DNA of 64,000 bases from Euprymna scolopes (lineage: Eukaryota): NCBI GenBank assembly GCA_053919585.1, contig CM132794.1; one strand, given 5' to 3'. The translations under genes were made by a program, and so were the position numbers. This document shows, piece by piece, positions 1 through 53,606 of the stretch. The notes below the pieces were generated by a model. The model was given only the letters and a program-made list of their open reading frames with translations. It was not told the origin of the DNA and searched no databases. Each line of letters starts with the position of its first letter. Positions within the stretch are counted from its first letter, which is position 1.

Positions 1-127
1 CTGAAATTAAAAAGACCGCTCGGCAAATGAAAAAGATATCCAGACAGATCGGAAAAATAAGTCTGTCCTGTTCAATCAAACGTGCTTGAATAATGACTTG
101 CTGCCAAAATATACAAATGTAAATACT
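1..127 (+). mobile_element. Penelope-like element, ORF N-terminal fragment
   Basis: Reads [18 protein letters not shown] / SVLFNQTCLNNDLLPKYTNVN, resembling the 'FN.TCL.N.LLPKYT' N-terminal motif of PLE ORFs. A closely similar copy lies on the minus strand at about 49128-49205. Confidence 0.65.
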
Positions 128-7859: not shown

Positions 7860-9170
7860 TAAATAAAATGATAAAATGTGTAAGGAATCGTAGTGTGATA
7901 GAAGGAATAAAATAAAATAAAAGGCAACATGAAGATCACAAGAAAAGAAAAGAGAGAAGAATAAGAAGATGATTATTGATTATTGGTGGAAGATGAAAGC
8001 GAAGAAGCGAAAGAAAATTGGAGACAGAAAAGAAAGGAAAGAAAAGAAAAAAAACGCACAAGAAAGAAAAGAAAAGAAAGATACAGTGAAGGGATGATAG
8101 GAAAGAGATAATGAAGAAAGGAAAAAGAAGTAAAAGATATAATAATGAATCGAAGGGGATTATGAAGCAACAGAAAAAAATGGGAAAAAGGTATAAAAAG
8201 ACAGAAGAAATTAAGAATAAAAATAATGAGAAAAAAATAGGAAAAGAAGATAACGAAACGAAAACAATGACGAAGAAGAAGAAAATGAAAAAAAATAGAA
8301 ATCTAAGGAGGTTATGAAGTAAGCGAAAAATGATATGTGAAACGAAAAAAAAGAGAAAAATAAAAATGAGGAAGACGTGGGAAAAGAAATAACGAAAGAA
8401 AGAACGAAGAAGAAGAAGAAGAAGAAGAAGAAGAAGAAGAAGAAGAAAAAGAAATTGAAGAAAAAGAAATTGAAGATTATGATACAAGCGAAAAACGATT
8501 AAAAAAAGTGAAACAAAACAAACGAAAAAAAGAGGATTAAAAATAAGGCAAACGTAGGTAAAGGAAATAACGAATAAAGACTAAACGAAGAAAAGAATAA
8601 AAAGAAAATGAAGAAAATAAAAAAAGACATCTATGCAGATTATGACGCTAGCGAAAAATTATGAAAAAGTTGGATGAAACAAACAAGAATAATAAAAATA
8701 ATAAAGCCATAGAAAAAAAAGAGATAACGAAGAAAAGAACGAAAGTAAAGAAAGAAAAAGAAGAAAAGAAAAAAAAAGAAAAGAGAAAAGAATACACCTA
8801 AGCAGATTATGATGTCGGCGAAAAATGATAAAACAGTGGAACGAAACAAATAAAGAGACTAAAAACAATAAAGATGTAGACAAAAAGAAATAACTTAGAT
8901 TTAAAAGGCGATAATGATGAAAACATTGCTATAACAAAGTAGAATGAAAACACAGAAGAAAAAGAAGAGAAATAAACCATAAAATAAGAACTTGAAGGAA
9001 GCAGAACAAATATATAATCAGAAACATCTTTTTTAAAACCACAGAAGAAAATATAAATGAAAAAGAAGAGGAAAAAGAAGAAATAAAAAAAGAAAATAAA
9101 AATAAAGGATGAGAATGAAAAGCGTAAAAGGTAGAAGAATACGTTGAATTAATAAAAAAGAAAATATTTG
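7860..9170 (+). repeat. Purine-rich low-complexity tract with (GAA)n and a cryptic ~165-bp period
   Basis: A/G-rich; (GAA)n at about 8406-8446; recurring GATTATGA...GCGAAAAA-like anchor at 8158, 8310, 8475, 8638 and 8805. Confidence 0.85.
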
Positions 9171-33056: not shown

Positions 33057-33120
33057 TTTGAAAATAATTTCTGACGAGGACGCTTCACAGAACGTCTGAA
33101 ACGCGTAAAAACGATTTCAA
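33057..33120 (+). ncRNA. Minimal type-I hammerhead ribozyme (family B)
   Basis: ttgaaaataattt-CTGACGA-ggacg cttcacagaa cgtct-GAAAC-gc-GTA-aaaacgatttcaa: intact core, 5-bp stem II, palindromic ACGCGT stem III, interrupted stem I. Confidence 0.82.
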
Positions 33121-38842: not shown

Positions 38843-39658
38843 TATATATACCGTTTTAGGTTTTCAATAAATTTCCTGACGGAACGGCAAACATTTATCA
38901 CCTGTGAACAAATAACATTTTAATTACAAATATCCCATTATTTGCAGAGTTCAACATAAGAATTTGTTGTGTCTGCACAAATAATTAACAAGAGCACGGA
39001 AAGTAAAGGTATACAATAATATATTAGGCAGAACAGTTATATACATATTTACATGTCTTCAGATATACTTAAGTTGGAGGTATTCCGGCAGGTGGCATGT
39101 TGGATGTCTTACTGGATGGAGCATAAGCGTTTTGCCTATTTGGCGGTCGTTGCCGGACTCCCCCGGTATTGGTGATTGATACCTTTATATATCACACTCA
39201 CCCGCCTATGTTAATTAGTGGGTGTCTCCACAACATAATTAATAAGGTAGTCAAGGTACACTCGAAAAAGGTTGGAATTTATGACGGGCGAAACGTTGTA
39301 AAATGTAAAATGTAAACATAGATGTTTAAATAATCTAAAAAAGAAAACTTATTCTCTTATCATTCAGAAACTGAGACACTATTTATTAGATCAATGTTAT
39401 AATCGATTTAAGAGTTCACATAGCCTGCGGTGTTATCCATTAGGTTTATGACGTGCAGTAGAAAATTGTAAAAATCAAACGAGATAATAAAATGCAATCT
39501 ATATAATACACCCCATTTTACCAAAATTTATCACGCCAAAATAAAATGAAGATGAGATGAGATGTCAAGCTTCTGAACCACGATATAGTGGTTTTCTGCA
39601 TTTGATGCATTGCCTCATCTCCCGTGTATATACAGTTGCAACTAATGTTGCTTTTCTT

Positions 39659-49236: not shown

Positions 49237-50456
49237 AAAAAAACAATAACCTCGNNNNNNNNNNNNNNNNNNNNNNNNNNNNNNNNNNNNNNNNNNNNNN
49301 NNNNNNNNNNNNNNNNNNNNNNNNNNNNNNNNNNNNNNNNNNNNNNNNNNNNNNNNNNNNNNNNNNNNNNNNNNNNNNNNNNNNNNNNNNNAATGGGAAT
49401 CCGGCTTTCCTGCTTTCTTGCTTTGCCCCCTTTTTTATGTCAGTGCCCAATGAATGATGTCAGAAAAGGCATCGTGCATATTGAATGACATCACAAAAGA
49501 GGATACAGTAAACAGTCATTTATCGAAGTAGAAGATGGGGATTGGTGTACTAGACAAAATGAGAGACAAATATTCGGGATAGGAGCGAGATATTGGAGAA
49601 ATGAGACTACAAAACGAGAAGGAGTGAAAAGATGGAAAATAAAGAGAGATGGATGAATTCATGGTTCCATACTTAACGTTGAACTCCTTTACATGCGAAT
49701 AAAACGAAACCGTTGTTTTCTTTCTTTTTCCTTATCCAAAGCAGGGCACAACACCAATGAAACAACAGAATCTACTATAAATCAGGGTCATCATGATGGG
49801 GTGTTGTAAGCTAAATTTTTATTCAAATTACATGTAAAATTCTGCATGTAGATAGTCAGAGAAACAATTAACAGAAAGCTTAGTCCATAGTTTTGATCCT
49901 GTTGTCAAATATTTCCCGCGTCAAGAAGCAGACTCGTTCTCCTATAGTCGAACGTTTCCTTGTAATGATAGGGGAGGCACAATGCAGTACTTCCAGCGAT
50001 ACTCGATTAATATTTCTATTATGAAAATGCTGGAGTAGTAAGCATAAGGATCCGTCGTCCATTGTTCTTTTTTTATCATTTTGTTTTAGCAGGAGACATG
50101 CAATCGCTCTCTCATATATTTTGCCCAGGGATCATTTTAAGGTTCTAACCACCCTTTTATACGTAATCGTTTGCATCAACAGAAACTGTCGCTACAACAG
50201 TCGGAATCTGAAAGTGATGCAGTGAACAACAACACAAATCGGCGACGTTGGTGTGCAAACTACGAGTCAAGTTTGTTTCATGGAAACACTTTCACATAGA
50301 GATGCTTGCAATTTTCACGTAGTCCCTCCCGGAAGTAGCTTATGAGTCGCGTTATAAATGCAATATCTCGGATCATGACTTACATTTCGTTACTACATAA
50401 ATTTTAATTCGTATTTGTAGTCCTGTTTGTGTTGAAGCAAAAGAAGTTACTCTAAC

Positions 50457-50917
50457 CCTAACCCTAAACCTCTGGCACGCTTTGGAATTAAGGAATAATA
50501 TATGTACCAATCGGTACGGACCCGACTATGGAAGATCAGATAATAAATAAATGTGGATTTATAAGATCAAAGAATCCAACCTTGATCGCCCTTCGGGGCC
50601 CGTGGCGCAGTTGATAGAGGCGTTGAATCTCTACAGTTCCAGATGAACATTTTCTGAAGATAGCGGTTTCAATCCCACCCAAAGCGTGCCAGAGGTTTAC
50701 TTGGCCAAAAATGTGGTGAGACGACAACAACTACGGACGGCAGTTATGGCTGAGAATGCAGTTAGGAGATTCGAAGTTCCTATCCGTCGCGGTTACCACC
50801 TGACGAAGGCCAGAGGAATAGTTGGCCGAAACGTTGCGAATGAACAAACCAATAAAAGATGAAAAACAACAACTAATAAAGATGAGAATAATAGTCCGAA
50901 ATAAAAATAAATTAATA
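50457..50917 (+). mobile_element. TSD-flanked composite SINE-like element: (CCCTAA) repeats, tRNA-like head, hammerhead tail
   Basis: 19-bp direct repeat caaaagaagttactctaac at 50438-50456 and 50918-50936; A-box-like 50603-50614; B-box-like 50665-50675; 21-bp perfect inverted repeat 50465-50485 / 50679-50699. Confidence 0.8.
50797..50838 (+). ncRNA. Minimal hammerhead motif (family D)
   Basis: cac-CTGACGA-a-ggcca gaggaatagt tggcc-GAAAC-GTT-gcg: 5-bp stem II, loopless palindromic AACGTT stem III, one mismatch in stem I. Confidence 0.72.
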
Positions 50918-51041
50918 CAAAAGAAGTTACTCTAACAAATAAACAAACGTTTGTTTTCAAATTACAATCAGTAAGATGGGTGTCTTTATCATTTTTGTTA
51001 TCTAATGCCTAACATTCAATATCTATTCGAACGATTCATTA

Positions 51042-52149: not shown

Positions 52150-53456
52150 CAGTATATATTCTTACCAAGTTTAAGTAAGATTAAGGGCTTCATAATAATT
52201 ATTAATAAAAATTGCAAAATTATTTATAGTCTGACGCCAAAGATATACATTTGAGTTCTTGTTTATTTTTCTTATTTACACATTCTACGAATGTATTTCC
52301 ATAATAATTTGGAGCACCAATAGAGTGGCATAAGCGAAACGCAATTTGCATAACATATATTTATAAATAATTTATTTCGTCAATATTGCTGACTTGATTA
52401 TATATATATACACACACATATATATATAAGCATATATATATATATCAATATATATATAGCTATATAATAACAGATCTATAGATACGTATGCATATTGTAG
52501 ATATGNNNNNNNNNNNNNNNNNNNNNNNNNNNNNNNNNNNNNNNNNNNNNNNNNNNNNNNNNNNNNNNNNNNNNNNNNNNNNNNNNNNNNNNNNNNNNNN
52601 NNNNNNNNNNNNNNNNNNNNNNNNNNNNNNNNNNNNNNNNNNNNNNNNNNNNNNNNNNNNNNNNNNNNNNNNNNNNNNNNNNNNNNNNNNNNNNNNNNNN
52701 NNNNNNNNNNNNNNNNNNNNNNNNNNNNNNNACTTAGAAATACTAGACACTGTATTTCCTATACATATATATGGGGTATAACTTCTAGATTTGAAATTAC
52801 CATAAACTCTTACTTTCAGTATAAGACGGAATGCCTGACTCCTTTAGAATATCATTAAATTTGGTATTACTGCTTATTTCTTCATACATATAACGAAATT
52901 GTGGTTGCTAAAAAGCGGGAAACTTCTCAAACAATAATATATTTTAACAAAAGCAAGAAATTAATTTGTTTTTTAAACCGATTACTTTTTGGTTTGTTGC
53001 AGCTGCTTCTTAACCTCCTCCTTTCCAAGTTGACGCAACATTGCAACATAGAGGCTTTTTTATAATTGACAGAAAAATAATATTCGTTAACACGGCAAGA
53101 CAATATTTTTTGCAATTCACAAGTCGAATATTTACTATTGAAATAAAAAAATCACCTGGTTTTAGAAGTCTGGAACTTGTTTTGCGTTGTTTCCCTCGAT
53201 AATATAATTATTAAAATCGTAGAAGTTAATAATTTAGCTACAATATATATAATTGAAACATAATAAACTGTAAACAATGGATTTTCCAACCTGAAATTTC
53301 CNNNNNNNNNNNNNNNNNNNNNNNNNNNNNNNNNNNNNNNNNNNNNNNNNNNNNNNNNNNNNNNNNNNNNNNNNNNNNNNNNNNNNNNNNNNNNNNNNNN
53401 NNNNNNNNNNNNNNNNNNNNNNNNNNNNNNNNNNNNNNNNNNNNNNNNNNNNNCGA

Positions 53457-53510
53457 TTAAGCTACACTGAATATTCCGCGTTTCATCCACTCTAGGACTC
53501 TTCAGGCTTA
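53457..53510 (-). ncRNA. Type-I hammerhead ribozyme (family A), intact
   Basis: taagc-CTGAAGA-gtcc tagagt ggat-GAAAC-gcggaatattcagt-GTA-gctta: all core nucleotides present and stems I, II and III pair. Confidence 0.88.
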
Positions 53511-53513
53511 TGC

Positions 53514-53568
53514 TTAAGCCTGAAGAGTCGTAGAGTGGATGAAACGCGGAATATTCAGTGTAGCTTAA
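53514..53568 (+). ncRNA. Type-I hammerhead ribozyme (family A), intact core
   Basis: ttaagc-CTGAAGA-gtcg tagagt ggat-GAAAC-gcggaatattcagt-GTA-gcttaa: 6-bp stem I; stem II shortened to 3 bp by a C-to-G change. Confidence 0.85.
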
Positions 53569-53570
53569 TC

Positions 53571-53606
<36 letters not shown>

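What the first reader, a model, noticed from the sequence alone, without database searches (positions are those of the whole stretch)
50438..50936. Candidate Penelope-mobilised SINE: telomere-like cap, tRNA-like Pol III head and hammerhead tail inside a 19-bp TSD
Seen: an exact 19-bp direct repeat brackets 461 bp. The insert starts with (CCCTAA) repeats and has a perfect 21-bp inverted repeat (50465-50485 / 50679-50699). It then has A- and B-box-like motifs, a 5'-truncated hammerhead half (gccagagg...ttggcc-aaaa, about 50688-50715) and, about 120 nt later, a full CTGACGA...GAAACGTT motif. Known: minimal hammerheads, partial tandem pseudo-LTRs and 5' inverted segments are hallmarks of Penelope-like elements, whereas tRNA-derived SINEs normally borrow LINE 3' tails. 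Inference: this is a Pol III-driven, non-coding, ribozyme-bearing element copied in trans by a PLE RT/GIY-YIG protein. The TSD end (CTAAC) is microhomologous to the telomere-like cap, hinting at how the 5' junction formed.
Basis: partly seen in the sequence, partly recalled or inferred. Interest (0 to 1): 0.85.

Follow-up and report, generated by a model that had tools for sequence, protein, structure and literature searches.

The report
Hammerhead-bearing SINE moved by Penelope elements
This is one copy of a young, thousands-strong family of short non-coding jumping elements in a mollusc genome. The family carries tRNA-type promoter boxes and a minimal hammerhead ribozyme motif, and its insertion scars show that Penelope-like retrotransposons copy it. 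The kind is already known, and the telomere-like cap is a one-off junction scar.

Summary
The insert is a real retrotransposed copy of a young family with a ~462-nt unit. A 27-mer from its hammerhead occurs 2,622 times in the genome, and copies lie about 3% from the family majority.

In 50 copies examined, 35 are head-to-head pairs of 5'-truncated copies with both 3' ends facing outward. Another 13 are partial tandems. Copies are flanked by different 9-19 bp target-site duplications. This is the hallmark of Penelope-like elements (PLEs), not of LINEs.

The same genome holds a very young autonomous PLE family with an RT plus GIY-YIG ORF. Its pseudo-LTR carries a hammerhead-like motif that aligns with the SINE's and covaries with it in helices I and II. 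Both elements end in (TA)n.

The A and B boxes are conserved in a relative that is only 74% identical. No tRNA fold is detected, and 116 nt of element sequence lie upstream of box A, so Pol III transcription is plausible but unproven. Ribozyme activity is untested, and Rfam finds no hammerhead.

The telomere-like cap and the 21-nt inverted patch are private to this copy and are 5'-junction filler.

The closest precedents are the Schistosoma Sm-alpha elements and animal non-LTR retrozymes. This scan has noted the same kind of element on other DNA of this genome (19 notes).

The parts
50438..50456 (.). left copy of the 19-bp target-site duplication
   Evidence: exact repeat of 50918-50936; other copies have different TSDs of 9-16 bp
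50457..50467 (+). telomere-like filler CCTAACCCTAA at the 5' junction; private to this copy
   Evidence: occurs once in the window; cap next to the element start occurs once in the genome, this locus itself; no such cap at two other tested junction types
50465..50485 (-). 21-nt inverted patch: reverse complement of unit 194-214 (50679-50699); private to this copy
   Evidence: other copies begin to match only at 50486
50486..50917 (+). family sequence proper: unit positions 1-433 of a ~462-nt unit
   Evidence: 40 scored genomic matches at 95-97% identity, 38 of them starting at query position 30, i.e. 50486; layouts
50588..50599 (+). GCCC-UUCG-GGGC hairpin just upstream of the tRNA-like part; possible stall point for the reverse transcriptase
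   Evidence: read from the sequence; arm 5' ends cluster at unit 108-129, 8 of 97 arms; the stall is inference
50603..50613 (+). box A-like motif
   Evidence: unit 117-142 is 24/26 conserved in a relative that is 74% identical overall
50665..50675 (+). box B-like motif
   Evidence: unit 163-190 is 27/28 conserved in the 74% relative, while the stretch between the boxes is about half identical
50675..50710 (+). degenerate paralogue of the hammerhead; helix II is kept, the core is lost
   Evidence: 72% direct repeat, inside the ~115-nt internal duplication of unit 122-235 and 255-355
50800..50835 (+). minimal hammerhead motif: CUGACGA, an extra A, a 5-bp helix II, GAAA, an ACGU palindrome in place of helix III, and the triplet GUU
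   Evidence: no Rfam match
50836..50917 (+). A-rich tail ending at the first of the family's two (TA)-tract 3' termini
   Evidence: 3' ends cluster at unit 429-442 and at 463+20..30
50918..50936 (.). right copy of the 19-bp target-site duplication

Best explanation
Positions 50486-50917 are a copy, about 3% diverged, of an abundant non-autonomous retroelement with a ~462-nt unit. The unit is built from two tandem ~120-nt modules, each a tRNA-like segment followed by a hammerhead. The first module keeps the A and B boxes. The second keeps a minimal hammerhead core of the dimer-dependent, PLE type. An A-rich tail follows and ends in a (TA) tract.

The element's RNA is copied in trans by the RT/GIY-YIG protein of a Penelope-like element through target-primed reverse transcription at staggered nicks, which gives TSDs of 9-19 bp. 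The 3'-OH ends of both nicks usually prime on an RNA 3' end, which gives head-to-head arms. Template jumps give partial tandems.

In the window copy the cDNA ran to unit position 1 and then copied 21 nt of antisense element sequence. It gained about 8 nt of TTAGGG-type repeat beyond the patch (an 11-nt filler that shares 3 nt with it) and was joined to the target through the 5-nt GTTAG/CTAAC microhomology.

Shown: family membership, mobility, the insertion architecture, the motif shared with a PLE, and the conserved boxes. Inferred: the trans-mobilisation itself, the polymerase that makes the template, ribozyme cleavage, and the order of events at the 5' junction.
For: Family and mobility:
- 1,658 genomic candidates; the 40 that were scored all carry head and tail together, 38 covering query 30 to about 461.
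- The hammerhead 27-mer occurs 2,622 times against 0 for the reversed control.
- TSDs differ from locus to locus.
- Copies agree with the family majority at 97% of positions on average.

PLE-type architecture:
- Of 50 loci, 35 are head-to-head, 13 are partial tandems and 2 are single pieces; none is tail-to-tail.
- Among the first listed 27-mer places I count 12 divergent pairs against 1 convergent pair.
- 3' ends are defined and 5' ends vary.
- These are the traits described for PLEs in PMC8557442 and PMC8969392.

Candidate partner:
- More than 15,000 GIY-YIG candidates in the genome.
- Its pseudo-LTR motif aligns with the SINE hammerhead (score 31 against 20.3 +/- 3.1; 1 of 500 shuffles reaches it).
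- 4 of 8 helix pairs change on both sides and 96% of cells pair, against 16-43% for slid controls.
- Both elements end in (TA)n.
- SINE 3' flanks are enriched for (TA)4: 14/86 against 40/1000, p = 3e-5.

Promoter boxes: conserved islands in a relative that is 74% identical overall.

RNA: contigs from oligo-dT and polyA RNA libraries carry the family.
Against: - Outside the ~45-nt hammerhead region no similarity to the sampled PLE family was found. The true partner may be another PLE family that I could not fetch.
- The PLE motif has U where the canonical core has C3.
- Rfam finds no hammerhead and no tRNA, even at E <= 10 on short stretches. ARAGORN finds no tRNA.
- Minimum-free-energy folding pairs part of the core into a competing stem.
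- Arm 5' ends are not enriched at the predicted cleavage site: 4 of 97 lie at unit 345-351.
- The RNA evidence consists of assembled contigs only. It gives no strand, ends or level, and DNA carry-over of a multi-thousand-copy repeat cannot be excluded.
Confidence: 0.75

Rival explanations
1. It is a retrozyme in the strict sense. Multimeric transcripts are cut by paired hammerheads, the ~462-nt monomer is ligated into a circle, and the PLE reverse transcriptase copies the circle by rolling. This would explain arms longer than one unit. It is a variant of the main reading that differs only in the form of the template.
For: The unit is circularly permutable, with tail, 30-nt linker and head contiguous in most copies. 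Arms reach 706 nt, about 1.5 units. Rare true tandems have 462-464 bp spacing. Animal retrozymes of 170-400 nt form circles and are linked to PLEs (PMC7229834; bioRxiv 10.64898/2026.07.22.740005).
Against: 3' ends fall at two fixed (TA) tracts rather than anywhere on a circle. No arm exceeds two units. There is only one intact hammerhead core per unit, and it is of the weak dimer-dependent type. No 5'-end cluster lies at the cleavage site. The runs offered were held only as contigs, which cannot show circles.
Confidence: 0.2
2. The template RNA is made by Pol II, or another TATA-dependent start, from a pseudo-LTR-like promoter in the tail and linker. The A and B boxes would then be a relic or serve another role.
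For: A TATATAA lies about 25-31 nt upstream of unit position 1 in the linker. Position 1 is the exact 5' junction in 4 of 50 loci, including the window copy. All copies carry the 116 nt upstream of box A, which a Pol III start next to box A would not include. PLE promoters lie in their pseudo-LTRs (PMC6765202). The family is present in polyA and oligo-dT libraries.
Against: Boxes A and B are conserved islands in a 74% relative, which points to selection on them. The whole sense strand lacks T4 runs, although that is expected about 39% of the time by chance. The Sm-alpha precedent shows that a Pol III head inside a tandem can transcribe the next unit (PMC6765202).
Confidence: 0.35
3. It is an ordinary LINE-mobilised tRNA-derived SINE whose hammerhead-like motif is a coincidence.
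For: It has A/B boxes, TSDs, variable 5' truncation and a short simple-repeat 3' end. Cephalopod SINEs with RTE-derived parts are known (PMC5786205).
Against: Head-to-head arms with both canonical 3' termini outward dominate, at 35 of 50 loci. The motif is expected 0.01 times per 64 kb and covaries with a PLE pseudo-LTR motif. The two Ceph-domain motifs quoted in PMC5786205 are absent. There is no poly(A).
Confidence: 0.05
4. It is a chance nesting of unrelated pieces (a tRNA-like SINE head, a PLE fragment and a telomeric repeat) inside a fortuitous direct repeat.
For: The cap and the inverted patch are indeed foreign to the family.
Against: Head and tail recur as one unit in all 40 scored copies and in the sample taken in coordinate order. 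The 19-bp exact TSD brackets the whole insert.
Confidence: 0.01

Closest known systems
Sm-alpha / Sj-alpha SINE-like elements of Schistosoma (Ferbeyre et al. 1998; Laha et al. 2000; as summarised in PMC6765202 and PMC2770079)
   Same: A short non-coding retroposon in which a tRNA-type Pol III promoter is followed by a hammerhead. It has thousands of copies, and tandem or partial-tandem copies are needed so that an upstream promoter can transcribe the next unit.
   Different: Sm-alpha heads are recognised as tRNA-Gln pseudogenes, and its hammerhead is the canonical type I that matches Rfam. Here neither a tRNA nor an Rfam hammerhead is detected, and the ribozyme motif is the minimal, helix-III-less PLE type. 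The unit is an internal dimer of the module, and the insertion scars are explicitly PLE-like. Sequence homology was not tested.
Animal non-LTR retrozymes (PMC7229834; bioRxiv 10.64898/2026.07.22.740005)
   Same: Non-autonomous, AT-rich, hammerhead-bearing repeats of a few hundred nt, with TSDs longer than 4 bp. They co-occur with PLEs and are related to PLE pseudo-LTRs.
   Different: Retrozymes are described mainly as tandem arrays with canonical type I hammerheads that yield circular RNAs. This family is dispersed, mostly under two units per locus, dominated by head-to-head arms, and it carries A/B boxes. Circles are untested.
Minimal hammerheads in PLE pseudo-LTRs (PMC4209133; Lunse et al. 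2017 as cited in PMC6765202)
   Same: A conserved core with no helix III loop, only a short palindrome (ACGU here), which implies action as a dimer. The motif lies about 70-135 nt from the element's 3' end.
   Different: Here the motif sits in an element with no ORF. It has an extra A between A9 and helix II. The sampled autonomous PLE of this genome has U at core position 3.
Ceph-SINEs of squids and cuttlefish (PMC5786205)
   Same: SINEs with a tRNA-type head in a mollusc host.
   Different: The two Ceph-domain motifs quoted in that paper are absent. Ceph-SINE bodies derive from RTE LINEs, and no hammerhead is reported for them.

Membership tests
Hammerhead ribozyme (type I, minimal PLE variant) | Conserved core CUGANGA ... 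GAAA | tested here: met
   CUGACGA and GAAA lie within 50800-50835. The pattern is expected 0.01 times per window and is kept in 66 family copies.
Hammerhead ribozyme (type I, minimal PLE variant) | Helix II closing the core | tested here: met
   A 5-bp GGCCA/UGGCC helix; 100% of cells pair, and 2 of 5 pairs are changed on both sides relative to the PLE motif. One extra A lies between A9 and the helix, which is non-canonical.
Hammerhead ribozyme (type I, minimal PLE variant) | Helix III with A15.1-U16.1 and an NUH cleavage triplet | tested here: inconclusive
   GAAAC-GUU leaves no loop. The ACGU palindrome can form helix III only between two copies, as described for PLE minimal hammerheads (PMC4209133). 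This was not tested physically.
Hammerhead ribozyme (type I, minimal PLE variant) | Helix I joining the two flanks | tested here: inconclusive
   Only 3 bp (CAC/GUG) in the family majority, with compensatory changes in a subfamily and in the PLE. In the window copy a private C at 50837 breaks the middle pair.
Hammerhead ribozyme (type I, minimal PLE variant) | Match to the curated covariance models | tested here: not met
   No Rfam hammerhead hit at the gathering score or at E <= 10 on 101 nt.
Hammerhead ribozyme (type I, minimal PLE variant) | Self-cleavage | not testable with these tools
   Needs an in vitro assay. Minimum-free-energy folding favours a competing stem over part of the core.
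tRNA-derived Pol III SINE | Internal A and B boxes | tested here: met
   Boxes at 50603-50613 and 50665-50675. They are conserved 24/26 and 27/28 in a relative that is 74% identical overall.
tRNA-derived Pol III SINE | Recognisable tRNA homology or cloverleaf | tested here: not met
   ARAGORN finds nothing at default settings, with or without introns. The Rfam tRNA model gives no hit at E <= 10.
tRNA-derived Pol III SINE | Element starts just upstream of box A | tested here: not met
   116 nt of family sequence precede box A in full copies.
tRNA-derived Pol III SINE | 3' tail shared with a partner LINE | not tested
   No LINE of this genome was sampled. The insertion architecture argues against a LINE partner.
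PLE-dependent non-autonomous element / non-LTR retrozyme | PLE-type insertion scars: inverted 5'-truncated copy, partial tandem, extension at one end | tested here: met
   35 head-to-head and 13 partial-tandem loci out of 50. A second 3' terminus lies about 51 nt beyond the first. Criteria from PMC8557442.
PLE-dependent non-autonomous element / non-LTR retrozyme | Sequence relationship to a PLE pseudo-LTR | tested here: inconclusive
   Only the ~45-nt hammerhead region aligns (z about 3.4), with covariation. The rest of the tail is unmatched.
PLE-dependent non-autonomous element / non-LTR retrozyme | Autonomous EN+ PLE present and recently active in the same genome | tested here: met
PLE-dependent non-autonomous element / non-LTR retrozyme | Long tandem arrays and circular RNA | tested here: inconclusive
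   Only rare 462-464 bp tandems. Contig data cannot show circles.
Ceph-SINE | Ceph-domain core motifs | tested here: not met
   The two motifs quoted in PMC5786205 are absent at up to 2 and up to 5 mismatches respectively.

The most novel reading that the evidence does not exclude
The cap records a telomerase-type event inside a Penelope-type integration. The free 3' end of the cDNA ended in ...GAGGTTTA, which resembles a telomeric G-strand end. It was extended with TTAGGG repeats, by telomerase or by the telomerase-related PLE reverse transcriptase, and then annealed to the target through GTTAG/CTAAC. That would be a natural footprint of crosstalk between telomere addition and PLE retrotransposition.
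Probability: 0.1. Interest if true: 0.7.

Novelty: new member of a known kind. Interest (0 to 1): 0.42.

Why it matters
No experiment has shown which enzyme moves the hammerhead-bearing SINE-like elements and animal retrozymes. The link to Penelope-like elements rests on co-occurrence and pseudo-LTR similarity. This family adds a different kind of evidence: thousands of young copies whose insertion scars are the PLE signature, next to a nearly identical set of intact PLE copies. That makes the mollusc genome a practical place to test PLE trans-mobilisation, the role of the dimer-dependent hammerhead, and whether a Pol III head can feed a PLE. For genome annotation, these loci should be masked as one PLE-dependent family, not as separate tRNA-like, ribozyme and inverted-repeat features.

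Tried and rejected
- Rfam (gathering score on the whole window; E <= 10 on 1.4 kb, 101 nt and 121 nt): no hammerhead and no tRNA.
- ARAGORN: no tRNA at default settings. Only implausible calls appear at thresholds of 60-80%.
- BLAST of the unit against 20 PLE loci: only low-complexity A-rich matches apart from the hammerhead. An A-rich local alignment inside the PLE ORF was dismissed as compositional.
- Recurrence of the telomere cap: none next to the element start, at the unit-415 junction hot spot, or at the PLE 5' end. Four other genomic CCAGAGGGTTAGGGTTAG sites are unrelated to the family.
- 5' ends at the predicted cleavage site: not enriched.
- T4-free sense strand as Pol III evidence: about 39% likely by chance.
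- Minimum-free-energy folds: helix II forms, but the core is partly sequestered and no dimer helix III is predicted.
- Read laying: only assembled contigs were available, so there are no molecule ends, strand or circles. The window's unique flanks have zero depth in the three RNA runs.
- Ceph-SINE membership was rejected.

Full report
**Observation.**
- An exact 19-bp direct repeat (50438-50456 and 50918-50936) brackets 461 bp, and an exact 21-nt inverted repeat joins 50465-50485 to 50679-50699.
- The insert opens with CCTAACCCTAA, which continues the CTAAC that ends the target-site duplication (TSD). That 11-mer occurs nowhere else in the 64-kb window.
- Box A-like and box B-like motifs lie at 50603-50613 and 50665-50675.
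- The pattern CTGANGA, 8-38 nt, GAAACGTH matches once, at 50800-50835, against 0.01 expected.
- The 'half hammerhead' is a 36-nt, 72% repeat of the real motif.

**It is a mobile family, and only part of the insert belongs to it.**
- A search of the window's own genome (5.9 Gb) gave 1,658 candidates. The 40 that were scored are 95-97% identical, and 38 of them cover query 30 to about 461, that is 50486-50917.
- The first 29 nt of the insert (cap plus inverted patch) are private to this copy.
- A 27-mer across the 3' half of the hammerhead occurs 2,622 times with at most one mismatch; the reversed control gives 0.
- Copies agree with the family majority at 97% of positions on average.
- TSDs differ from locus to locus and are mostly 9-16 bp.
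- Run labels point to a mollusc, and window GC is 34%.

**Anatomy of the unit.**
- In most copies the tail runs on through a 30-nt linker into the head, so the unit is a circularly permutable ~462 nt.
- 3' ends fall in two short (TA) tracts, at unit 429-442 (the window copy's type) and about 51 nt further on, at 463+20..30. 5' junctions are scattered.
- The unit contains an internal duplication of about 115 nt, unit 122-235 against 255-355 (score 44 against 21.7 +/- 4.2; 0 of 1000 shuffles reach it).
- It is therefore two tandem modules, each a tRNA-like segment plus a hammerhead. The first keeps the A/B boxes and has lost the ribozyme core. The second keeps the core.

**Insertion architecture.**
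- I examined the 30 best-matching loci and 20 more taken in coordinate order from the 27-mer list. Of these 50, 35 are head-to-head pairs of 5'-truncated copies with both 3' ends outward, 13 are same-strand partial tandems, 2 are single pieces and none is tail-to-tail.
- Among the listed 27-mer places I count 12 divergent pairs against 1 convergent pair, plus two tandems at 462-464 bp.
- Partial tandems that form a pseudo-LTR, an adjacent inverted 5'-truncated copy and a short extension at one end are the published hallmarks of Penelope-like elements (PLEs) (PMC8557442; PMC8969392).
- L1-type twin priming would not place the same 3' terminus at both outer ends.

**A candidate partner.**
- The genome has more than 15,000 GIY-YIG candidates.
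- Eight fetched loci carry a ~3-kb element with an 804-808 aa ORF (one of 870 aa). [quoted passage not shown] Copies are 97-99% identical and have a 71-bp pseudo-LTR and an inverted arm.
- The element ends in (TA)n.
- About 70 nt before its end lies a conserved hammerhead-like motif with the same odd features as the SINE's: an extra A after the core, a 5-bp GC-rich helix II, and GAAACGTTG. It has U instead of C at core position 3.
- The two motifs align locally (score 31 against 20.3 +/- 3.1; 1 of 500 shuffles reaches it).
- On a seven-row alignment (A1), 96% of cells pair, against 16-43% for slid controls, and 4 of 8 pairs change on both sides. Only about three lineages are independent.
- SINE 3' flanks are enriched for (TA)4: 14/86 against 40/1000.
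- Beyond the hammerhead, no similarity to this PLE was found.

**Promoter.**
- In a relative that is 74% identical overall, box A (24/26) and the box B region (27/28) are conserved islands, while the stretch between them is about half identical. That argues for selection on the boxes.
- Against a simple Pol III SINE: no tRNA fold is detected, and 116 nt of element sequence precede box A.
- The Sm-alpha model fits, in which a Pol III head in an upstream unit transcribes the next unit (PMC6765202).
- So does a TATATAA in the linker, 25-31 nt upstream of unit position 1. Position 1 is the exact 5' junction in 4 of 50 loci, including this one.
- I cannot choose between these two.
- The window copy's TTTT at 50650-50653 is a private change; the family majority reads TTGT.

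**Ribozyme.**
- The motif meets the sequence definition of the minimal, dimer-dependent PLE hammerhead (PMC4209133).
- It is not matched by Rfam.
- It is not the predicted minimum-free-energy fold.
- There is no excess of 5' ends at the cleavage site.
- In this copy a private C at 50837 breaks helix I. Activity remains untested.

**RNA.**
- Contigs of oligo-dT and polyA RNA libraries hold the family in large numbers, with the highest summed depth over the hammerhead bin. None covers the window's unique flanks.
- One contig of run X1 (molecule type only guessed by the tool; I read it as DNA from its even low depth over the unique flank) spans the left junction, cap included.
- Contigs give no ends or strand, and DNA carry-over cannot be excluded.

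**The cap.**
- The cap next to the element start occurs once in the genome, at this locus.
- No cap was found at two other junction types, and look-alike sites elsewhere are unrelated to the family.
- My reading, which is inference, is as follows. The cDNA reached unit position 1, switched onto antisense element sequence for 21 nt, and ended in ...GAGGTTTA. It then gained about 8 nt of G-strand repeat beyond the patch (the 11-nt filler shares 3 nt with the patch). It was joined through the 5-nt GTTAG/CTAAC microhomology.
- It is a single event.

**Comparison and verdict.**
- It is not a Ceph-SINE.
- This scan has 19 notes of the same kind of element elsewhere in this genome, and one follow-up reached a similar reading.
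- Verdict: a real, well-defined, PLE-dependent hammerhead SINE. It is a new family of a known kind, with one curious junction scar.

Noticed in passing
L049:3039-6034 (also L043-L048, L050): A very young autonomous PLE family: a ~3-kb unit with an 804-808 aa RT + GIY-YIG ORF. Copies are 97-99% identical, carry a 71-bp pseudo-LTR and a ~353-nt inverted arm joined at the same point in all copies, and end in (TA)n. The full-length arm begins 3 nt before the predicted cleavage site of its own hammerhead-like motif, whose core has U instead of C3.
   Followed up: partly
window 53454-53571: Head-to-head pair of hammerhead-like motifs (CTGAAGAG...GATGAAACGCGG) forming a palindrome next to a masked N run. 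The same motif type, also head-to-head, lies about 2 kb upstream of the PLE ORF in L048 (at about 8301-8308).
   Followed up: partly
window 33071-33110: Another minimal hammerhead-like motif, with an ACGCGT palindrome in place of helix III. It is unrelated in sequence to the family studied here.
   Followed up: no
L004:2496-3200: Satellite with a period of about 37 bp. Each unit carries TTAGGGTTAGGG(TTA) followed by about 22 nt of non-telomeric sequence.
   Followed up: no
G000:C11:1.68-2.16 Mb: Dense tRNA gene cluster on one strand: 61 of the 62 tRNA matches reported by the Rfam tRNA search lie here. The first look found about 506,000 tRNA-like candidates genome-wide.
   Followed up: no
window 39260-39320 and L050:2303-2366, L024:622-685: Decayed relatives of the same hammerhead tail (...GAAACGTTGT...). 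RNA contigs also show subfamilies that share the hammerhead but diverge just after it, many with the canonical GUC triplet.
   Followed up: partly
   Followed up: no
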